From Guillardia theta CCMP2712 (taxonomy: Eukaryota; Protista; Cryptophyta), in assembly GCF_000315625.1 (NCBI RefSeq), contig NW_005434610.1, forward strand, positions 170,265-234,264: a stretch of 64,000 nucleotides of DNA. Direction: 5' to 3'. The notes under the pieces are model-generated. The model had not been told where the DNA came from. It ran no database searches and saw only the letters and a program-made list of their open reading frames with translations. The translations under genes were made by a program, and so were the position numbers. This document shows positions 369 through 17,687 of this stretch, piece after piece (position 1 is the stretch's first letter; each line of letters opens with the position of its first letter).

Positions 369-3899
<3,531 letters not shown>

Positions 3900-4450
3900 T
3901 TGCATAATTATAAGCATTATACATAATTATATGATAAAAAATAAAAATAAAAAATGACCAGTCGGAGTAAAACAGAGTTGACTAATTTCGGAACGTCATG
4001 TCGAGAAGGCGAAGGGGAAGGAGGAGGGGGGGGAGGAGGAGAAGGGAGGTTGAGGGTAGTGAAGGGAGTTAAGAGTAGGATAAGTAAGAGAAAATGGTCA
4101 GAGATAGAGGAGCAAGTGGAAGCATGGGAGAAAGTGGGGGAGGACGAAGTAGTTGAACGCAAGTTAGAGGAAGAAGTTGAAGAGGAAGTATGGGGAAAGG
4201 AGGAAGGTCCTGCGCTTCTTATGGTGAACCAGACCAAAGTGCATGCTGAAGTGTCTTACATTTGCGTGTGGTCTTGCTTTACTTGTGGAGAAACTAGAGT
4301 TCTTTGCGGAGATCGTTTGACAGCTTAGCACTCAGGGGGTCTTACTGGAAATCTTGTCGTTTTGCTTTGCATGACTTGTACTCAAGCTCGGGATATTAGC
4401 TGACATATGTCACAGTGCATGATCAAGATGAGCAGGACCTGAAGAAGAGG

Positions 4451-6210
4451 ATGGCGTTTGCTGCCGAACCTCCCCGCAAGAGGGACATGAAATATCACGA
4501 GGACGACAATAAAGAAGTTCAAGAGACTGCTCTGAAGAGAGAGCTTGATGTGTTCGATCTCACAATCATCGGTGTCGGAGGGATCGTGGGAGCTGGGATC
4601 TTCGTCCTCTCCGGGCAAGCAGCAGCCATGTACGCGGGCCCTGCGGTGGTTCTTTCCTTTGCGATCGCAGGAGGGTGTTGTACAATCTACGCTCTGTGCT
4701 TTGCCGAGCTCTCCACCATGGTCACAGACACTGGGAGTGCGTACACGTACGCTCGTCTCGCCTTCGGGAATTTTGTCGGGTGGATCGTGGGATGGTCGCT
4801 GGTGGCAGAGTACTTGTTCTGTGTCTCTGCTGTCTCGGTGGGATGGAGCGGTTATGCGAGCGAGATCTTTCAGCAGCTGGGAGTTCCTCTGAGCTCCCGA
4901 TGGAGTACTCCACCCTTAGCCTTCGACGAGAACCACAACATCTACTTCACTGGTGCTGTGCTCAACGGCCCTGCTGTCTTCCTCGTCGTCTTCGCCTCCA
5001 TCATCGTTGGGCTCGGCGTCAGGATGTCAGCCATCGTTGCCAAGGTCAGCGTGCTGATCAAGCTGGGGGTGATCGCGACGTTCCTTGCCTGCGGCATGTT
5101 CTTCATCCACGGAGAGAACTACAGCCCCTTCGTTCCCGAGAACAAGGAGGGCGACTTCAAGGACTTCGGGCACTTCGGGTGGTCAGGAGTCTTGAGAGGG
5201 TCGAGCATTGTATTCTTTTCCTACGTCGGTTTCGACGCCATTACTACAGCAGCATCAGAAGCCAAAGATCCGAGCAACGACCTTCCCAACAGCATCTTCT
5301 TGAGCCTGGGGATCTCGACTGCGCTCTACATGCTGGTCCGCTTGCCCTATTCCTCATGCTTCCTGCCCTCTGCCTCCTCCTGCTTCTTTTCTCCTGCCTG
5401 CTTCTTGCCTTGAGCGAGCTATTGACTCCTCTCTACAGGTCGCCTTCGTCATGTGTGGCCTCGTCTCCTACACAGCCCTGGGAGTTGCCGACCCCATTCT
5501 CGTCGCCGTCAAGGCTGCAGGCCCGGGGCTGTCCTGGCTTGTCCCCCTCATCGCCGTCGCCGTTGTAGTCGGGCTGCCTGGGGTTGTGGTGGTGTCGCTC
5601 TATGCTGTGACCCGCGTGCTCTACGTCATGGCGCTTGACGGAATGCTCCCTCGGCAGTTCCAGGAGGTCAACGAGACCTTCAGCTCCCCGATGTTCAGCA
5701 CGGGCTTTGCTGGAGTGCTTGCTGCCATCATCGCTGCCTTGTTCCCCATCTCGGCCATCGCTGAGTTTGTTTCCATTGGCACCCTGCTGGCCTTTGCTGT
5801 CATCTGCTATGCTGTCGTCTCCTTGAGGGAGAAACGCCCCGACATGCCGCGCAACTATCGCGTAATCCTCCTCCCCTCTCCTTCCCCCTTCTTCGTGCGT
5901 CCGCCTGACCTTTGTCGTCAGGTACCTTTCTCACCCTACCTGCCTTATGCAGGCATGGTCATCGCTGTTTCTCAGGTTTGACCTCCTGCCACCCTCCATC
6001 GCTCCTTCTGCACGTTCCTCTTGCACGTTTGCTCCTCTTCTCTCTCATTTTCCCTTGAACTTCCTGTCGTGACTTGCGCAAAAGATCCTCTTCCTCCCCT
6101 GGATGGCGTGGGTGCGGATGTTGTTCTGGATCTTGATGGGCCTCGTCATCTGGTACTTCTATGGAAACCGTGTGGAGGAGAAGCCATACTCCTACGATCG
6201 GGTAGAGTAA
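4451..6210 (+). CDS. APC-superfamily (cationic amino acid transporter-like) permease, multi-exon
   Basis: LKRELDVFDLTIIGVGGIVGAGIFVLSG, AGPAVVLSF, GSAYTYA, FFSYVGFDAITTAASEAKDP, RVLYVMALDGMLP, SIGTLLAF; last exon ends ...YSYDRVE* at 6210; start codon uncertain. Confidence 0.92.
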
Positions 6211-6372
6211 GATATCAGAGCGAGTGCAAACAAAATCTTGGGGCTGAAACAAGGGAGAGGTGAGTAGGAAGGCGAGAGGCAAAGGGATACAGAGCATGAG
6301 CAGCGAAGCGTGAGCAGCGCATGCCTTGATACCTAGTCTCTTCCTCCGCTTGCTCCATCCCCTTCAGCTCCC

Positions 6373-9300
6373 TTACCAATGCTGGACCCCTCGAATGAAG
6401 AGCTGCTTCAGCTTGCTCATCAGCTTCCAGTCCTCACTAGTCATCTCCTCCGCGAAGTGATCTTTCATTGCCTGTATCCCGTCCCGGGTGATCTTGCTGT
6501 AAAGTTTCACCTTGTGATCGAACTGCCGCCCATAGAGGATGTGTGACTGCTGGTCGTTGCTGGGCTCGATCTTCACTGCGACGCTCATCCCGACCTTCGC
6601 CACCTTCACCTCCTTGTGGTTGTTCTGGATGGACGTCACTTTGCCGATCTCTAGAAAGTTGAGCTCAGGAATGCAGAGAGGCGTTCCAACCTGCCAGATG
6701 ACAGTTGAGTCTGAGCCGCGAGGAGGGGGGGGGGGGGGGGAAGGGGGGAAGGGTCAGGTGAGGGCGAGGAAGAAGAGGGAGAGAGCTAAATGTGAGCTTG
6801 ATCAGTGGGAGGCATGAGGGAGAGGCAAGAATCAGTGAGGCAGGAGAAGAGGTAGCAGGGCAGGGGGAGAAGGAGGTACAAGAGGAGGGAACATGAGACG
6901 GGGAGCAGGGGAGCTAGAATGGAGTACCTTGAGCGAACCCTCCTTCACCTCACAACCGAGAATGATCGGATTTCTCTTGTTGAACACGTTCTTTGGGATG
7001 ATACTGAGGATCACAGGGAAGACGGCGACGCCATTGGAGTACAGCTGGACAGGTTGTCATGCACGGAGCGGGTGCGGGGTGACTTGACCTGCTCCCTCTT
7101 TGCCGCCTTCTTCTCCTCCATGAAACTCTTGAACTGATCGAAGAGATGGTAGATGATGTTCGCTGTAAAGATCTTGATTCCAGCCTTCTTTGCAAGCGCC
7201 TCTGCCTCAGGCACAATCTGCTCGCTGTCAGCTCCGTTGCTTCCGCTTCCTCCTGCTCACCTTCACATCGAAGGCCAAGATCATGGCCAGGTCTGGCGCT
7301 CGTTCGAGCATTGCACTGCATGAGATTGAGAGGAAGCAAACGCATAGATGTCGATCACAAGTGACAAGAACAAGAGGACGCGACAAGACATAGCAGTCGC
7401 ATCAAACACCCACCACGATGTTCAACTCTCCCACATCATCTCAACAAGGGACAAGATCTTTCCAACCTGGCTCGGATGACATCTTTCTTGTGCACGGGCC
7501 CGATGTTGATGGAGGCAACAGGAATGCTCGAGTTGTGCAGGAAGTCCAAAAGTGCCTCCAGAGCTCCCAAGGTCGATGCCTTGGAAAATGTCAGTCTGAT
7601 AACTCCTTCCTCCTCCTCCTCCTCCCTCCATCTGCTTGCCAACCACCTCCCTTCACCTTACTCTTTACCCCCCCCCACCCCCCCCCATTCTTCTCCCAAC
7701 TCCTTTCTCTTCACTCCCTCCTCTTCACTCTCCCCTCCTCTGCCCTTCCTCGCATGTTACCTGGACATGAACACCTTTCCCGGACTTGTCCACGTCTTTC
7801 TTCAGCTCCTCAAGGTCTTCCATCACCGAGCTGGGAAATGTCAATCGCCGCCAACAGTACCCTCCTCCCACCTCTTGAGCTCCTCTATATCATCTTCCTT
7901 CTCCAGTCTGAGCAGCGACGTTCCTGAGAGCGAATCAAGACTAAGACGTCTCCTCGCCCTTGTCACCTGCTACTGCTCCTTCCAGACCGCTCGCTGCAAT
8001 CTTCACGCCCATGGCGGCCTGCAGACTTGATGTCACGGGCGGGAGAGCGACGGCCATGCTTGCCTCTATGCTCTTGTGGTGGACATACTCGTTCTTCACG
8101 CGCAGTTCTTTCATAGGGTGAGGAGTGAGGAGAGTCCTGATGGTCGTGACGATTGGGCCCTGCATGCCGCAAACCACAATCGTGTCGCCCTCGTGCAGCT
8201 CTCCATGGACTGCCGAAACGACCGGCGTCAGCATCTGACACTCGAGGAGGGGAAGGAACCAAGGATAATATCGAGCGTGGTCCCGAAGCCTTCCGTCACT
8301 TTGACCTTTGGTGAAACTTCAGTGGGGAGGAAGAGGAGGAGAGGAGGAGAAGCAGAAGTGAGAGGAAGCGAAGGGAGTTGCCAGGACGAGCAGCGGAAGG
8401 CGATGAGCAGACCTCAAGAACCGTCGCCTCAAGAGCTTCGCTGAGCATCAATCTGAAGGGAACGTTCAGCGAAGAAGGGACGGTGAGTGGGAATATCGAC
8501 CTGTCGACCAACATCTTCTGGGTCAACTGGATGCCGAGGAGGAGGAGATCAGGGACGCCTTCACCGGTGATCGCCGATGTTGGAACCACCGAGACCACCT
8601 GCGACAAGCAGAAGTGAATATGCACGCGCAACCAAATCAATCTGTTTGTGACTAGGAGAAATTGATGGCAATCGCCAGTTCTTACTTTTCTTGGGTTCTT
8701 GTTCTCGTAGTAGAGATCAGCATTCAATCCCTGGCTAGCTATCTCTCCCTTCATTGGGTGTTACCATCCACTGAGTATCCGTACTTCAATCACCTTAATC
8801 CCTTGCCACCTGCTTTCAAACTCTCTGACTGTATGGCTCTTCTGCTTGGCTAGCGTATCCTGTCGATGAAGCGATATTACAATGAAAGGTTGGCTCCAGC
8901 AGGACAAGCAGCACCTGTATCGGAGAATCTTTGTTCGGCTGCCAATCATAGCATCTGATCTCGAGTTACAACGTCTTTGAGTGTTCAAGAACATGGAATG
9001 ACCGATCGATCTTGTTCAAGGCGACAAGAAAAGGGCACCTCCTCCTCTTCAACAGCTGCAGAAATTCAGCACGGAAATCTCCGACACGCCTTCCCAGTCA
9101 CCTGCAGAGATTCGATCGTCTGGGGCTCCAGCCCGTGCATGATGTCGACAACGAGGACGCAGATGTCGCAGATCGAAGTTCCTCGTGACCGGAGGTTGCT
9201 GAACGATTCGTGTCCGGGGGTATCGATCACCAGCAGCCCGGGAATCTTGTAGTCGACCTTAACAGAATGGGACACCTGATCCGTGAGCTTGCGCAGGTTT

Positions 9301-10084
9301 GTCATGGGGAAGAACGTCGCGCCAATCTGCTGTGTGATCCCTCCCGCCTCTCCCTCTTGCACGTTGGTCTTCCTTACTTTGTCCAACAACTTTGTCTTTC
9401 CGGTGTCCACATGTCCCAGTACACAGAGGATGGGCGACCTCAATCTGGCAAGATTCGTCAGAGAGCTGAGAGAGGCGAACAAGATCATCGAGAACAGTCC
9501 TTTCACCTGTCTTTGCTTCTCGCTTGCTTCGCGTCTTCCTTCCTTTGCAAACGATCCTGCTTCGCTGCTTCGATTCTTGCCAGCAGTGCCTCGTCGACCT
9601 GCGCACTTTCCTCCTCGTCGCTCTCCTCCTCCTCGCCTTCTTGCTTCCTCCTCCGCTTCTCTTCCTCTTGTTTCCTGGCTGCCAGCAATTCCTCTGGTAT
9701 CTTGTACTTGTCGTCTGTATTGAGATACTGGATGTCCTGTGTCAATTCCTCCAGGTCGACCGCCTCTTCCGCCTCCTGCGTGTTCGCTCCTGCCACGTCC
9801 TGATCGTCACTGTCGTCTGATGAAACATAGCTCGATGTCCCCAGCTCCGACGAGCTCTCCCCTTTTGCTGCTCCTCCCCGCAACCGCAGTCGCGCCGAAG
9901 ATGAAAGCTGTGAAAAGTCGTTCAAGAAACGCTGCGAGGTCGACCCTGAGGAGACGATTCGAGGAAGATGGATGCCAACCTTGTGCTGCGAACTCTCAAG
10001 AAGCGTTGTGCATCCAACAAGCAGCAAGATTGCAACGGAAACGTAAAACTTGCTGTGCGCGTCCACGGCGAATTCCCGAAACAT
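6373..10084 (-). CDS. eIF5B: Eukaryotic translation initiation factor 5B with an N-terminal signal-peptide-like presequence, multi-exon
   Basis: [84 protein letters not shown]...SKITR...DWKL (eukaryotic-type C-terminus). Confidence 0.95.
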
Positions 10085-11322
10085 ATTAATCGAACTATGT
10101 GGAGGAAAACTCTGGGAACTCGGAGACCGGCTGAACCATCAGACGCTGCGAGCAAGATCAGGTTGCAAGAATGAACACCATCGATGAAAGAGCTTCAATC
10201 CACTCTCTCTTCAACTTCTATCAAGAATGTGTGGGAGCACCAACTCAAACGGGTTAGAGATAGCGGTCGTGAATCAATGACTTTCGGCTTTCGTCACCCC
10301 AAGACTAAGAGCATTTTGTCTTCCAGAGCATCAAAAAGCCGTCCCTCATGTACTGTCTCCTTTCTACCATATCTTTCATGCATCGAAAGTACATGATCAC
10401 TTGGCCCCCGTATCGCCCTCAGCAATCATTCCATCCCTCTCTGGAGTTCTTCACTTTCATGCTCATCCCCTTTCTCTAGCACTGTTCAAAGGACATCTTT
10501 CATCCTAATCCTTATTCTCCTCCTCCTCCTCCTCCTCCTCCTCCTCTCGTAACGGCGATCGCATTTCATCGATCCTCATAGCGACCGCCCCCGCAAGTAC
10601 CCCCACCCCCTCTGACCAGTTTCAGCCAACAAAATCTTTCCTACCCCACTTTGAGTTAATCCACCTACCACTACCACCAACGACATTACTATTGAGCACC
10701 CGTCCTAGACTACCCATAGATACAATATACCCCACCACTTTGTATCCACCCCAGCTTTCTCCCCACCCCGTCTCCTGTAGGGAATTCTGGTGAAATGCAA
10801 GGGTGCTTCGAGCTATTGCCTGCTACTCCCCCCACCCACCCCCACCCCACCCTCCTGATGAGGTAGGCTAAGCGTTTCACGCCAGGCCCAGAGGTCCAGA
10901 TGTCCAGATCCCGTGGTACTAACTTTACTCAATAAATTTGAAATCATCTGGACCAATGGCATAAAAGAGAATTATATTTCCAAAGGTCGAGATGGTGAAC
11001 CGTTGTGGTCGAGTTTGTCAGCAGGGTGATTGCACCCTCATACCCATGCTTCCCGCCCTTCCCTTCCTGCCTTGCTGTGTACCCCGTGCGGACTCCAGTG
11101 ATGAAGCTCGAGTTTGCCATTAGCTCGAGCTAATGGCAAACTTGAGTACCTTGAGTACCTTGAATCCCTGTCGCATGATGACGAAAGTATTCTGGAGACA
11201 TGGACACGTTGTGAGATGCTTCTGTTGATGTGCAATGTGACGGGCAATGACGAGAAAGCGCCTGAACTGGGGGGAATGGGTGGAGACCCTATTGGACAAG
11301 GAAGTCATTCTTCGCCTTTAAC

Positions 11323-11925
11323 GTGCAGGCCGTGTGTGATGCCAATCGAAAGGGTGCAGCCCTAGCAAGAGATGGCAGAAACATTGGAAATGGAATGTAT
11401 ATAGTTGGAGATGCAGCATACAAAGGAATTCCTGGAATAATCACTCCTTTTGATGGATCAAAGCTCCCAATTTGGCAAGACAGTTATAATTTTCATCAAT
11501 CTCAAATCCGGACTAACATTGAGTGCGCATTCGGAATGTTGAGGAACAGATGGGGAGTGTTCTGGCGTGGATTACGCACAGACTCACTGGAAATTGCAAG
11601 CACTAGTGTGAGTGTATGTTTGCAATTGCACAATTTTATATTAGACATGGATGGAACAGATGCCGATCCTCTTGAGGAAATTATTGTAGAATAGGAGTAC
11701 TGCTCCCCCGTGCCATGCCAGGACAGATTGTCAGAACAGCATCGACCTATCTTGAATGAAAACGGTGGTCCAGCTGATTTTTGGTCGAGTTCTCCCATCA
11801 ACGCCATGGTTACTGACGAGTTTGACAGTGTCAGTATCAGGAACAGTCTAGTTGAAACACTGCAAAACATGCAGATACCAAGACCATCCTGGAATCAAAG
11901 GCCGCCGCCAGATTCTTCGATGTAA
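11323..11925 (+). pseudogene. Truncated Harbinger (HARBI1/DDE_Tnp_4) transposase
   Basis: NVQAVCDA, IVGDAAY, TPF, YNFHQSQIRTNIECAFGMLRNRWG motifs; the GSxHD segment is missing between CDA and GDAAY; in-frame TAG at 11692-11694 with the same frame continuing to 11925. Confidence 0.85.
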
Positions 11926-13494: not shown

Positions 13495-16400
13495 ATGGAG
13501 ATTTGCTTCATGCCACCACGACATTGTGTGACTTCCTACTTTGACAGCCCAAAATTTCTGAATTTTGCTACTCCGACATTTCGTGGGATCTGTTCCAGAC
13601 TCCATTTTCCCCTTGTCGGGGAAAGGAAATCCGACAAAAAAGCTATGGAAGAGGAATGTGGTAGAGAAGAGGTTGAAATGACACCCGACTGTAACTCGTG
13701 TGTTTCTGCCGTCGGAAACCATGAACAGTCTCGTCAACACAAGTCAGATGTAGCGATGGAGGACAGTACTCTGAACAACAGTGTTTCTGTATCCTTGAGG
13801 TTTGAGAATATGGTTGTCAGTCCTCCAACACAGATCAAAGACAAACGCAAGAGACGACGTCCTGGAGCGCGGGACCTCGACCTTTTCACTCTGACTGACA
13901 AGTCAAAGAAGGCTCGTGGATCACCTTCCTTACGTGAAAGAAGAGAATGTGAAACATCTACAGAAGATTCGAAAAGCATGGATCCTGCTAACATGATGGA
14001 ATCTCCATGTGTCAACAACCCAGTATCGAATTCGAGGGTTAAGCTCAAATTTGGAATCGAGGACCTTGTGCTTCATGAGAATTGTAGCATGGACTTTAGT
14101 GACGAGAGCCCGGAGAAAAAATTGATTTGCATCAAATTCAAGAGCGAAGAACAGATCCATTTCTTTTATGTGTATGGTTTTGCAGTGACTCCGGATTTGT
14201 ATGCTCAAGATTCATATTTTGTTACTGATGGCAAAAGAGTTTTTGCAATTTTTCTACATCCCAACAAAAGAATTACAGACAAGAATCTTGTAGTTTTTGC
14301 AGACGACTCTTGGGCAATTCTGAAGGTAACAGACTTCTTGATAGAACCTATGCAACCTCCATTGCCATCTCCAGCCAAGCTCAGAACCAGACAAACCAGA
14401 CAAAGTCAGGATCTCTGTTCACTACTTCGCGGATGCGTGGTACTTCCACGTTTTCAATCTTTCGTTTTCTCGTGTTGCCAGGGAGAACAAGCAACTATTT
14501 TGTACAGATTCAAAGATCAATGGAAGAAGGTGATCATTGACAAAAAGGAAAAGAGGAGTTCTTACTTCGTCGTTCTGGAAGATGGAAGCAAAACTAAAGT
14601 CAGAATGCTAGAATCAAAATACTTGAATGCGTCGGATCTTGGCACGAAGTTGAAAAGCAAACATGGAGTGGATGATGACATGGGACGATGGTTCGCAGTG
14701 TTCAACTTGTCATCAGTACTGCAAAATCCCTCCTTTTTTGATTTCGATGTTCGAGGAGAGTCTCAGTCTCTTGTAAAACTTGAAGAACCTGATGATTCAG
14801 ATGTTTCTGGTGCAGCATTCGCATCAGAATCTGACGTGGAATTTCAATCACCTCCTAGATCTGCTCAAGGAAAAAGGAGAGTAAGTCGAAAACATCATGG
14901 ACGTGATAACAAAATTTCAAAACTCCAGGAAGAGATCACTCCAACTCCCGATGAAGGCTTATACGAGATTGTTGAGTTTTTTGAAGAAACCGATGCTGCG
15001 GAAGTATCAGAATCTAGAACGGACCTGATGGAATTCGACGAATCTCCGATAGAAAATCGCAAACCAGATTTTGCATCAGTGCCGTACATGTCGGACATTC
15101 CACCTGAAAGGCCTCAATCTCCTTGTCAACACGACGCAAACGTGTTAACAGAATCACAAGAGATCGGACCGGCAGTCAATGATCAAGAATCATTGAAAAT
15201 CAATCATGAAGTCGAGCATTCAATCAAAGAGGATCATCAAAGTCCATTGGAAGACGATAATCAAAACGTTCTGGAAGATGATCGTGTTGGAATATTGGAC
15301 GATGAAACTGACACAATACCGGGAGGGGATTATCCAAGTGTATCACAGAATGATGATGCAATGGTGTTAGAAAGGACAGGAGCTGTACCGGAGAAGTATG
15401 GAGAAGCTTCATCTGAAAACAAGACACAAGCTGTATGTGAGAACAACAATGGAAATGTTCTGAAGAACCAAGAAGAAACTGTTAATCTTTTGAGGAACCA
15501 AGACGAAACTGTATTCGTCAATGACAAAACTCAAGAAGTCGAAAGTGAGAAAACGCAGCAAACTGCATTGGAGGAGACAGCTGACAATGTATCAGAGCAG
15601 TTGCAACAAGGGGTATCGGGCAAACCAGAGACTGTAACAGACATGACACAAAATATTTCATTGGAGAACACGCAGGAACCCATATCGCTGAGTGCGCAGG
15701 AAACTGTATTGAAGAACGAAATGCAGACTGTATTGGCGAAAACACAAGAGACTGCATCGGATAGAACAGAAGAGAAGCAAGAATCTGGATTGGAGAAGAT
15801 ACAAGAATGTGTATCGCAGAACATCGAGGATAACGTGCAAATCGAAGACAACAACCAGCACGATGAAAAAGTTGAAATGTTCTGTAAACCAGAATGTGTC
15901 TCGGAGAACAACGAAGAAAAGGAAATGAGGAACAATGATGAGATTGTATTTGAGATGCCACTCGAGACAATGATAGATGAGAACGAAGAAACGGTTCATC
16001 GAAACAACGATGTGATGGAGAACAAAAATGATTGTGATTTCAAGGAAAAGGAAGAACATTCGTGCGACGATAAGTCTATGGAAATACTAGAGGATGAAGC
16101 ACCCGAAAACACACATGCGATGGCGTGCGATGCAAACCTGGATGAAGAGCCCGCACACAAGAAGATGTCTGTAAGGGACGAATTGTTGATTTATCCTGTG
16201 GACCAGCGATTTCTCAACGAAGTGGAAAAACAGTTCGACTTAACGAGAATGGTTGGTTCGGGAACTTTTGGGGAGGTTTATGAGGCGTACGATAGGGTGA
16301 ATCATCGCAAAGTTGCAATCAAACGATTGTTTCCCTATCAGACTCTTGATGCCCACAAGAAGGAGGCTGGGTTCATATCAAGCCTGAATGGCAAACCCAA

Positions 16401-17687
16401 CATTGTACAGCTTCAATACAGCCCGCCGTTAGCGCCTGATGGAATCATCCTCGTCGAAGAGCAGCAGGCTTTGCTATTCGAATTCTTCGAGCATGACAAT
16501 CCTTCGGATTACGTCAAGGACTTAACGATCAAAGAGATCAGCCATTACATGAAGAATCTGTTTGTAGCCCTACGATCCGTCCATTCCCTCGGGATCATAC
16601 ATCGAGATGTGAAGCTCAACAACTTTCTCTACGACAGGAAGAACAAGAAGTACTTGCTGGTAGACTTCGGGCTGGCAGAGAAGAAAATCCCCAAGGGCAC
16701 TATGGGTGCTTCAAGGCCAAAAGAACAGGTTCAGCCCTCTGGCCGCAGGGCGACGTCAGAAACGGCGAGTAAGAGCGGCCATCCGACGAAGAGCAACGGC
16801 TACATCCTGAGCTCTGACGTCTCGACCGCGAGCTCTCGCACCTCTCGGCCTCAGAAGGAGAAGGAGAGGATAGAGATGGCGCAGCAGATGGCCAAGAGGC
16901 GCATGATGAGCGGCAGGAAGACCAAGGACGCGCAGACGGTGAGCAGCTCCAGAGTCAAGCTCGAACTCCCCGCCAACCGCGGAGGGACTCGAGGGTACAG
17001 AGCTCCTGAGGTCGTGATGGGCAGTCAGCACCAGACGACGGCAGTCGACGTGTGGAGCGCTGGAGTGATTCTGCTGAACCTGCTGTGCCGCAAGACCCAC
17101 TTCCAGTGGTTTCGGCATGACAATGACAACCTGGCGACCATGGAGATCTACGGGTAAGCGCTGCCTTGACAGTCTGTTGTTGGGTAGCCTGACTGTGTTG
17201 TAGTCTTCGGCTGTATATTAAGACCATGGACGCTGTGTGGAGGCAGAATTATGGGTATACGGGTCAGTACAGGGACAAGATGAGGGACGTGATCAAAGAT
17301 TTCAACCTCGACGTTGAGGTGATCCCGCTGTAGTTGTTGATGCTTGTTGAGTTGTTGATGTGCCTGATGATGATAGAGATGACGACGAGATTGCAATAGT
17401 TAGTGGAGGAGGAGGAGGAGGAGGAGGAGGAGGAGGAGGTAGCTAACATCGTCTTCTAGTTCGGAGAGTTCGAACAGTATTTTAACTACGCTCGCGGCTT
17501 GAAGCAGACTTGGCGAACCTTATGCAGTGCCTTGAGCACAGAAGAAGGATGCAAGGACTGGCTGGAGGTGGAGGAGAAGCATCCCATGTGGGACTTTCTC
17601 AACCGCTGCCTCGACATCGACCCCCGTACGAGGATCACAGCACAAGACGCGCTGAAGCATCCCTTCCTTACTGGTGCTATGAAGTAA
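13495..17687 (+). CDS. CDC7: CDC7-like Ser/Thr kinase with a ~890-aa N-terminal extension
   Basis: GSGTFGEVY, VAIK, IHRDVKLNNFLY, LVDFGLA, long insert, ANRGGTRGYRAPEV, QTTAVDVWSAGVI (CDC7 signature); small 3' exons end RITAQDALKHPFL...* at 17687. Confidence 0.85.

What the first reader, a model, noticed from the sequence alone, without database searches (positions are those of the whole stretch)
9503..10084. Cytosolic-type eIF5B with an ER signal peptide: likely imported factor for nucleomorph ribosomes
A eukaryotic eIF5B should be cytosolic, yet this one begins with [19 protein letters not shown], a Ser/Arg-rich transit-like stretch and RLRLRGG before the acidic N-terminal region. Inference: a nucleus-encoded copy serving 80S ribosomes of the endosymbiont's remnant cytosol.
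Basis: partly seen in the sequence, partly recalled or inferred. Interest (0 to 1): 0.7.

Follow-up and report, generated by a model that had tools for sequence, protein, structure and literature searches.

The report
Imported eIF5B for the nucleomorph's ribosomes
The cryptophyte alga Guillardia theta has a second, expressed eIF5B gene. Its first exon, missing from the public gene model, adds a secretory-type import leader ending in ubiquitin's last six residues, so the factor is most likely shipped to the ribosomes of the relict endosymbiont cytoplasm.

Summary
Window 6376-10084 (minus strand) holds an 18-exon, 791-codon eIF5B gene of Guillardia theta CCMP2712.

- **Transcript:** spliced transcript contigs from two studies join exon 1 to the GTPase exon and reach 39-63 nt upstream of ATG 10084.
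- **Public model:** GUITHDRAFT_75289 (629 aa) starts inside intron 1 and lacks the leader.
- **Leader:** hydrophobic core (aa 13-25), a Ser/Thr-rich basic spacer, then LRLRGG (aa 66-71), followed by an acidic and a Lys/Glu-rich region.
- **Conservation:** the metagenomic orthologues whose 5' end is held show the same leader build, and LRGG is invariant in all seven sequences aligned.
- **Precedent:** the G. theta histone H2A that was immunolocalised to the nucleomorph has the same leader type.
- **Other copies:** the genome has a leaderless, tRNA-binding-domain eIF5B (contig C9) and a degenerate copy (C28).
- **Nucleomorph:** a published gene table for eight cryptophyte nucleomorphs lists no eIF5B.
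- **Origin:** unresolved. The tree does not place the gene with red algae, but the AU test rejects neither red-algal (p 0.086) nor host (p 0.32) ancestry.

The scan noted the LRLRGG leader motif before on other DNA of this genome. I class this as a new member of a known kind.

The parts
10085..10147 (-). 5' untranslated leader covered by transcript contigs. It holds a 14-codon upstream ORF (10139 down to about 10095) in a different frame from the main ORF.
   Evidence: The X1 contig ends at 10123 and the X2 contig at 10147. Sequence read.
10004..10084 (-). Signal-peptide-like N-terminus, aa 1-27 ([12 protein letters not shown] + [13 protein letters not shown] + TT). The hydrophobic core is aa 13-25 (10010-10048).
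   Evidence: Kyte-Doolittle 2.87 over 11 residues. The equivalent hydrophobic start is present in orthologues P0003, P0029, P0117 and the extended L015 ORF.
9890..10003 (-). Transit-peptide-like spacer, aa 28-65: Ser/Thr-rich with net positive charge.
   Evidence: Composition. Length and sequence vary among orthologues.
9872..9889 (-). LRLRGG, aa 66-71, identical to the last six residues of ubiquitin. Candidate site where the leader is removed.
   Evidence: LRGG is invariant in all 7 aligned leaders (A2). Only 3 of about 520 other eIF5B homologues have LRGG anywhere. The nucleomorph-localised H2A leader also ends in LRLRGG.
9695..9871 (-). Acidic, Ser-rich start of the presumed mature protein, aa 72-130, with the conserved SS.VSSD and [13 protein letters not shown] blocks.
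   Evidence: Alignment A2; composition.
9507..9694 (-). Lys/Glu-rich region, aa 131-192. This is the short counterpart of the charged N-terminal region of canonical eIF5B and forms the end of exon 1.
9445..9506 (-). Intron 1 (GT..AG, 62 nt). The start codon of the public model GUITHDRAFT_75289 (9486-9488) lies inside it.
   Evidence: Joint 9444|9507 in X1 and X2 contigs. P0402 begins [15 protein letters not shown], which is translated intron.
9102..9444 (-). Exon 2: GTPase domain with [13 protein letters not shown] and DTPGH motifs.
   Evidence: Pfam GTP_EFTU, E 2.3e-24. 65-84% identical to eukaryotic eIF5B G domains.
6376..9055 (-). Exons 3-18 with their introns: rest of the G domain (NKID), domain II, domain III (IF-2) and domain IV. 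The stop codon is at 6376-6378.
   Evidence: Fifteen joints come from transcript contigs. Two further introns (8955-9002, 8749-8793) were placed so that the model fits the X1 contig length. Pfam domains on P0402 are above their cut-offs.
8019..8063 (-). GC..AG intron, which the public model reads through as 15 residues ([15 protein letters not shown]).
   Evidence: Joint in X1 and X2 contigs; intron ends. The 15 residues form a gap against P0403, the C9 copy and Cyanidium eIF5B.

Best explanation
This is a nucleus-encoded paralogue of the eukaryotic subunit-joining GTPase eIF5B, made with an N-terminal import leader and delivered to the periplastidal compartment (PPC), the remnant cytoplasm of the red-algal endosymbiont.

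**Shown here**
- The gene is expressed and spliced so that the leader sits in frame with a complete four-domain eIF5B.
- A leaderless eIF5B exists elsewhere in the genome.
- Orthologues keep the same leader build: hydrophobic start, variable Ser/Thr-rich basic spacer, invariant LRGG.
- The same build heads the H2A that was localised experimentally to the nucleomorph.

**Inferred**
- The hydrophobic start drives co-translational entry into the chloroplast ER.
- The spacer takes the protein through the ERAD-like SELMA translocon of the periplastidal membrane.
- The leader is removed in the PPC, probably right after LRLRGG by a ubiquitin-type protease.
- The mature protein of about 720 aa joins 60S to 40S on nucleomorph-type 80S ribosomes, working with nucleomorph-encoded eIF1A, because nucleomorph genomes carry no eIF5B gene.
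For: - **Gene and transcript:** (spliced contigs from two studies; 5' ends at 10123 and 10147; 18 exons, 2376 nt, in frame).
- **Family:** (GTP_EFTU, D2, IF-2 and D4 all above Pfam cut-offs; 55% identity to Cyanidium eIF5B over 614 aa).
- **Other copies:**. There are only four IF-2-family loci in the 87 Mb assembly: one bacterial-type, C9, C28 and this one. In one search the C9 upstream ORF holds a tRNA_bind domain and no hydrophobic start.
- **Orthologous leaders:** (LRGG invariant in 7 sequences).
- **Precedent:** searches show the H2A locus leader as MRGLRIFLGTLLLLQLFVSSTSA..LRLRGG, in frame with the histone core. One search covers the immunofluorescence to the nucleomorph (PMC5443833).
- **Need for import:** (no eIF5B in eight nucleomorph gene lists; about 2,400 nucleus-encoded PPC proteins estimated; PMC4494062).
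Against: - No localisation data exist for this protein.
- No trained predictor (SignalP, ASAFind) could be run. The n-region is long and carries two acidic residues, which is untypical of signal peptides.
- One review states that the G. theta nucleomorph encodes eIF5B (PMC3388326). That list omits eIF5A, which the nucleomorph does encode, so a mix-up is likely, but I could not search nucleomorph DNA itself. It is not in the assembly I could reach.
- Contigs cannot exclude additional, shorter transcripts.
- Cleavage at LRGG is inference only. The known SELMA deubiquitinase ptDUP is reported absent from cryptophytes (PMC12412216).
- In one orthologue (P0029) a naive -3/-1 reading puts Phe at +1, the stromal signature.
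Confidence: 0.8

Rival explanations
1. The protein enters the ER but stays in the endomembrane or secretory system, or is degraded there. On this view the leader is an evolutionary accident with no role in the PPC.
For: Only the hydrophobic start is needed for ER entry. No localisation was measured. The n-region is atypical.
Against: A ribosome-dependent GTPase has no substrate in the ER lumen. The whole leader build, including LRGG, is conserved in orthologues that are 69% or more diverged in the leader itself, and it matches the nucleomorph-localised H2A. The core keeps all GTPase motifs.
Confidence: 0.05
2. The protein crosses all four membranes and acts in the plastid stroma.
For: Bipartite leaders also serve stromal proteins. 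One orthologue (P0029) may have Phe at +1.
Against: Stromal ribosomes are 70S and use bacterial-type IF2, and a bacterial-type IF2 gene is present separately. Plausible cleavage sites here give T, T or L at +1, not an aromatic residue, which in cryptophytes is the PPC signature (PMC5443833; PMC4494062).
Confidence: 0.04
3. The leader is mostly bypassed. The gene is a second cytosolic eIF5B, made from shorter transcripts or by leaky scanning, or it is dual-targeted.
For: Contig ends are not true transcript starts. The raw RNA reads gave no coverage of exon 1. The public model starts downstream.
Against: Exon 1 has no second in-frame ATG. The public start codon lies in an intron that is spliced out in both RNA assemblies. 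The next in-frame Met lies inside the G domain, after the P-loop. The leader is conserved across orthologues.
Confidence: 0.06
4. Exon 1 is an assembly or annotation artefact and does not belong to the eIF5B gene.
For: The public annotation omits it.
Against: The exon 1-exon 2 joint is present in contigs of two independent studies, at the same depth as the rest of the transcript in X1. Orthologues P0003 and P0403 carry leader and G domain in one uninterrupted ORF.
Confidence: 0.01

Closest known systems
[quoted passage not shown] 2017, PMC5443833)
   Same: It is a nuclear paralogue of a factor the nucleomorph does not encode, and leaderless paralogues exist for the host compartment. Its leader has the same build: hydrophobic start, basic spacer, LRLRGG. 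Its origin is likewise unclear in trees.
   Different: It is a histone, not a translation factor, and its localisation has been shown by immunofluorescence. For the eIF5B, localisation is only inferred.
Canonical cytosolic eIF5B (yeast Fun12, human EIF5B)
   Same: It has the same four-domain core (G, II, III, IV) with all GTPase motifs, and is 50-57% identical to red-algal, plant and fungal eIF5B. A charged region precedes the G domain.
   Different: The canonical factor has a charged N-terminal region of 400-600 aa where this gene has about 120 aa, and it has no hydrophobic start. The host-type copy of G. theta itself (C9) is more divergent (43%) and carries an N-terminal tRNA-binding domain.
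Predicted nucleus-encoded PPC proteome of G. theta (about 2,400 proteins, Curtis et al. 2012, as cited in PMC4494062), including PPC-targeted aminoacyl-tRNA synthetases
   Same: The principle is the same: the host nucleus supplies the translation apparatus of the relict cytoplasm through signal-peptide-plus-transit-peptide-like leaders. The same paper notes that gene models are often cut at the 5' end.
   Different: I could not check whether eIF5B is on that list, because the paper is not held. The deposited model lacks the leader, so a prediction based on that catalogue would miss it.
Ubiquitin C-terminal tail (LRLRGG) as cut by deubiquitinases in ubiquitin fusion proteins
   Same: The hexapeptide is identical and sits exactly where the variable leader ends and the conserved mature part begins. 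Gly-Gly is invariant in the orthologues.
   Different: No ubiquitin fold precedes it (Pfam finds nothing at E up to 1). Cleavage has not been shown, and ptDUP, the SELMA deubiquitinase of diatoms, is reported missing in cryptophytes.

Membership tests
eIF5B / aIF5B (IF2 superfamily, eukaryotic-archaeal type) | Translational GTPase domain with G1 (GHVDxGKT), switch I (GGITQ), G3 (DTPGH) and G4 (NKxD) | tested here: met
   Exons 2-3 read [19 protein letters not shown] and NKID. Pfam GTP_EFTU E 6.2e-36 on P0402.
eIF5B / aIF5B (IF2 superfamily, eukaryotic-archaeal type) | Four-domain architecture: G, domain II, IF-2 domain III, domain IV (GTP_EFTU_D4) | tested here: met
   PF03144, PF11987 and PF14578 are all above their curated cut-offs on P0402.
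eIF5B / aIF5B (IF2 superfamily, eukaryotic-archaeal type) | Closest relatives are eukaryotic eIF5B rather than bacterial or organellar IF2 | tested here: met
   Named top hits are eukaryotic eIF5B. 55% identity to Cyanidium eIF5B. The bacterial-type IF2 is a separate locus.
eIF5B / aIF5B (IF2 superfamily, eukaryotic-archaeal type) | Ribosome-dependent GTPase activity that promotes subunit joining | not testable with these tools
   Needs biochemistry.
Cryptophyte PPC-targeted preprotein (bipartite leader) | N-terminal ER signal peptide | tested here: inconclusive
   A 13-residue hydrophobic core (KD 2.87) sits at aa 13-25, and small residues follow that fit the -3/-1 rule. No trained predictor was available, and the n-region is long with two acidic residues.
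Cryptophyte PPC-targeted preprotein (bipartite leader) | Transit-peptide-like stretch: hydroxylated, net positive, few acidic residues | tested here: met
   aa 28-75 hold 11 S/T, 7 K/R and 2 D/E.
Cryptophyte PPC-targeted preprotein (bipartite leader) | No aromatic residue at +1 of the transit-peptide-like part (PPC retention rather than stromal import) | tested here: inconclusive
   Candidate cleavage sites VGC|T, GCT|T and CTT|L give T, T or L, but the site itself is not predicted by a trained tool.
Cryptophyte PPC-targeted preprotein (bipartite leader) | Localisation in the PPC or nucleomorph | not testable with these tools
   There is only the analogy with the immunolocalised H2A, which has the same leader build.
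Leaders ending in the ubiquitin tail (scan notes s1-432835, s1-431643, s1-434697) | Hydrophobic start, spacer, then (L)RLRGG directly before the conserved mature part | tested here: met
   LRLRGG at aa 66-71. LRGG is invariant in 7 orthologous leaders. The same holds in the H2A locus.
Leaders ending in the ubiquitin tail (scan notes s1-432835, s1-431643, s1-434697) | Proteolytic removal of the leader after Gly-Gly | not testable with these tools
   Needs N-terminal proteomics or a cleavage assay.

The most novel reading that the evidence does not exclude
The invariant LRGG at the end of the leader is a maturation signal. PPC and nucleomorph preproteins of cryptophytes would then be trimmed by a ubiquitin-specific protease after a ubiquitin-tail mimic. 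That would tie leader removal to the ubiquitin machinery of the SELMA translocon and give a sequence marker for the PPC proteome. eIF5B and the nucleomorph H2A would be two clean test substrates.
Probability: 0.4. Interest if true: 0.8.

Novelty: new member of a known kind. Interest (0 to 1): 0.5.

Why it matters
Cryptophytes run two eukaryotic translation systems in one cell. The published nucleomorph gene lists include no subunit-joining GTPase, so this gene names the missing factor and shows that it comes from the host nucleus.

The deposited gene model hides the leader, so catalogue-based predictions of the PPC proteome would miss this protein. The orthologue set also gives comparative evidence that the ubiquitin-tail motif LRGG is the one constrained element of the leader. 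That makes a processing step after import directly testable.

The gene's origin is a further point. It does not visibly derive from red algae, and the host-type copy is the more divergent of the two. This bears on how host and endosymbiont genes were re-assigned after endosymbiosis.

Tried and rejected
1. **Exhaustive HMMER search with the G-domain exon.** The domain is too conserved. The top 150 hits came from all over eukaryotes, and the gene's own model was not returned.
2. **Word searches with a euglenid (P0050) and a red-algal (P0090) eIF5B.** The best 120 hits held no cryptophyte orthologue. Only the search with P0003 brought up the public model and further orthologues.
3. **MAFFT alignment of separate exon pieces to a full-length protein (A1).** The pieces were scattered, so it was not used.
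4. **68-row tree under the mixture model.** It did not finish. It was replaced by an LG+G4 tree of 68 rows and a mixture-model tree of 34 rows.
5. **Red-algal origin.** The tree does not favour it, but it is not rejected (AU p 0.086). Sisterhood with the host-type copy is also not rejected (p 0.32).
6. **Raw RNA reads of run X13.** Only 52 reads were laid and none on exon 1, so no true transcript start was obtained.
7. **Ubiquitin fold in the leader.** Pfam finds nothing at E up to 1.
8. **Nucleomorph DNA.** It is not part of the assembly I could reach. An eIF-5a search finds only two nuclear loci, although the nucleomorph encodes eif5A. Absence of eIF5B there therefore rests on a published table alone.
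9. **Curtis et al. 2012.** The paper is not held, so its PPC list could not be checked.
10. **Search with the joined model.** No database search was made with the joined 791-aa model. Exons were searched one by one by reference, and the public model P0402 served for full-length comparisons. Exon translations of the C9 and C28 copies were strung together only inside the tree script.

Full report
**What is there.** The window is G000:C64:170265-234264 of an 87.1 Mb, 669-contig assembly. The public protein made from this locus is GUITHDRAFT_75289 of Guillardia theta CCMP2712 (P0402), so the organism is the cryptophyte G. theta. Downstream on the same strand lie pieces of an IF2/eIF5B-type GTPase. 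Pfam finds GTP_EFTU, domain 2, IF-2 and domain 4, all above their curated cut-offs on P0402.

**Gene model and expression.** Contigs of public runs laid on 6200-10480 include a fully spliced 2,459-nt contig in X1 (depth 226) and spliced contigs in X2, which comes from a different study. An unspliced contig in X8 looks like genomic DNA. Two further short introns (8955-9002 and 8749-8793) were placed to remove in-frame stops and account for the 93 nt by which the X1 contig is shorter.

The result is 18 exons and 2,376 nt, giving 791 codons with every exon open in its expected phase. One intron (8019-8063) has GC..AG ends.

The contigs reach 10123 (X1) and 10147 (X2), which is 39 and 63 nt upstream of ATG 10084. 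The longer one includes a 14-codon upstream ORF in another frame. Contigs cannot give true transcript starts, and the raw-read run X13 put no reads on exon 1. What is shown is that mRNA includes the hydrophobic segment, not that no shorter transcript exists.

**The public model misses the leader.** P0402 (629 aa) begins [15 protein letters not shown], which is translated intron 1, and so lacks all 192 residues of exon 1. It also reads the GC..AG intron through as 15 residues. Those residues form a gap against an orthologue, the host-type copy and a red-algal eIF5B.

**Anatomy of exon 1.**
- aa 1-12: [12 protein letters not shown].
- aa 13-25: hydrophobic core [13 protein letters not shown] (Kyte-Doolittle 2.87 over 11 residues).
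- aa 28-65: a Ser/Thr-rich, net-positive spacer.
- aa 66-71: LRLRGG.
- aa 72-130: acidic and Ser-rich.
- aa 131-192: Lys/Glu-rich, running into the G domain.

M1 is the only Met in the exon. Among 317 full-length-like eIF5B homologues collected here, four have a comparably hydrophobic stretch (2.5 or more) within the first 60 residues. One of those, P0003, proved to be an orthologue of this gene.

**Orthologues keep the leader.** P0003, P0401, P0403, P0029, P0117 and P0439 are unnamed proteins from metagenome or run assemblies. They share diagnostic stretches of the core with the window gene, and P0403 is 69% identical over 484 aa. They form a clade with it in trees (99% SH-aLRT).

Where the 5' end is complete, each starts with a hydrophobic segment:
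- P0003: MRQPVLLVLWLAATVWA.
- P0029: ALLARNAMLMALLSAIV.
- P0117: LGALLLAALSAQICCLA.
- P0403: an in-frame upstream Met at L015:1590 gives MRPWLRRGLKVKLHLVVLVAITLASY.

In the alignment of seven leaders (A2), the spacer is variable in length and sequence. LRGG is invariant and is followed by the conserved blocks SS.VSSD and [12 protein letters not shown]. Pfam finds no ubiquitin fold, or any other domain, in the leaders. That these orthologues come from cryptophytes is my inference, because the sources give no organism.

**A published precedent with the same leader.** G. theta has one histone H2A with an N-terminal extension, and an antibody placed it on the nucleomorph (PMC5443833). I located the H2A loci in the genome. 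Only one, L020, has an upstream leader exon. It reads MRGLRIFLGTLLLLQLFVSSTSA-LRPVDLGKHAVPKSRKSRHGPRADLS-LRLRGG-QDAGEKKE. A GT donor and an AG acceptor put it in frame with the histone core. The build is therefore the same: hydrophobic start, basic spacer, LRLRGG.

Earlier notes of this scan report the same motif on other genes of this genome. Those are unchecked AI notes, and the H2A test is my own. A library search found no paper that links LRLRGG or RLRGG with periplastid import, SELMA or Guillardia.

**Other copies in the genome.** Searches with the G-domain exon and with the IF-2 family find only four loci.
- C9:270k is a bacterial-type IF2 in a 777-codon ORF.
- C9:945k is a complete eIF5B. 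Its upstream ORF holds a tRNA-binding domain (PF01588, E 4e-13) and a long Lys/Glu-rich region, with no hydrophobic start. Its orthologues (the P0033 cluster) start directly with that domain.
- C28:315k is a close relative of the C9 copy. It has a degenerate switch I (FEMPGNHQ in place of GEAGGITQ) and its ORF stops before domain IV.
- The fourth locus is the window gene itself.

The window gene is only 43% identical to the C9 copy but 55% identical to a red-algal eIF5B. The leader-bearing copy is therefore the more ordinary-looking eIF5B of the two.

[quoted passage not shown] It lists eif1A, eif2B, eif2G, eif4A, eif4E, eif5A, eif6, sui1 and tif211, but no eIF5B. A 2012 review says the G. theta nucleomorph encodes eIF5B (PMC3388326). 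Its list omits eIF5A, so I take this for a slip, but I could not check the DNA. The nucleomorph is not in the assembly I could search, since an eIF-5a search found only two nuclear loci.

**Origin.** I built an LG+G4 tree of 68 rows and an LG+C20 (PMSF) tree of 34 rows. In both, the leader-bearing clade sits in a well-supported group with two labyrinthulids and three unnamed sequences. Red algae form their own clade, and the C9-type forms a long separate branch. AU tests do not reject a clade with red algae (p 0.086, delta lnL 15.7) or with the C9-type (p 0.32). The question of red-algal versus host origin stays open. These are quick searches supported by SH-aLRT only, with long branches and few cryptist taxa.

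**How it most likely works.** See the best explanation. The mRNA, the frame, the complete eIF5B core, the conserved leader and the H2A parallel are shown. The import route (Sec61, then SELMA), the removal of the leader after Gly-Gly and the role on nucleomorph-type ribosomes are inferred. The rule that a non-aromatic +1 residue keeps a protein in the PPC is from the literature. ptDUP, the deubiquitinase of the diatom SELMA system, is reported absent from cryptophytes, so the enzyme that would cut at LRGG is unknown.

**Verdict.** The kind is known: nucleus-encoded PPC proteins have been estimated at about 2,400 since 2012. This is a new, well-documented member whose leader is absent from the deposited annotation. 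The LRGG motif was already noted elsewhere in this scan. This locus adds the comparative evidence that it is the only invariant part of the leader.

No database search was run with the joined 791-aa model. Exons were searched singly by reference.

Noticed in passing
L012 (G000:C28:309000-318999), minus strand about 7733-5098: A third eIF5B-like locus, close to the C9 host-type copy. The P-loop is kept (GHLHTG|KT), but switch I is degenerate (FEMPGNHQ instead of GEAGGITQ) and the last ORF stops before domain IV. It may be a pseudogene or a pseudo-GTPase.
   Followed up: partly
L011 (G000:C9:940000-949999), 3548-5128: The leaderless host-type eIF5B of G. theta carries an N-terminal tRNA-binding domain (PF01588, E 4e-13). 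Its orthologues (P0033 cluster) do too, and precomputed Pfam hits list the same domain on one green-algal eIF5B (Closterium, P0341) and on one unnamed protein (P0352).
   Followed up: partly
window 8019-8063 (minus strand): A GC..AG intron, removed in both RNA assemblies but read through as 15 residues in the public protein model.
   Followed up: yes
window 10095-10139 (minus strand): A 14-codon upstream ORF in the 5' leader, present only in the longer transcript contig (X2).
   Followed up: no
L020 (G000:C4:100750-103806), 430-639: The leader exon of the nucleomorph-targeted histone H2A ends in LRLRGG, like the eIF5B leader.
   Followed up: yes
literature (PMC3388326 versus PMC9548191 Table S1): A review lists eIF5B among nucleomorph-encoded factors and omits eIF5A, while the gene table of eight nucleomorphs lists eif5A and no eIF5B. 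This is probably a slip in the review.
   Followed up: partly
window 11323-11694 (+) and 13495-17157 (+): A 123-codon ORF (IITPFDGS...NIECAFGMLRNRWGVFW) and a 1,220-codon ORF with a protein-kinase motif (HRDVKLNNF...DFGLAE) lie next to the eIF5B gene. From memory, the first resembles a Harbinger/PIF-type transposase. Neither was searched.
   Followed up: no
window 6741: A/G difference in RNA reads (24 of 28 in X13) and in X1 contigs. The position lies in the intron 6691-6927, in a low-complexity stretch, so it may be a polymorphism or come from reads of another locus.
   Followed up: no
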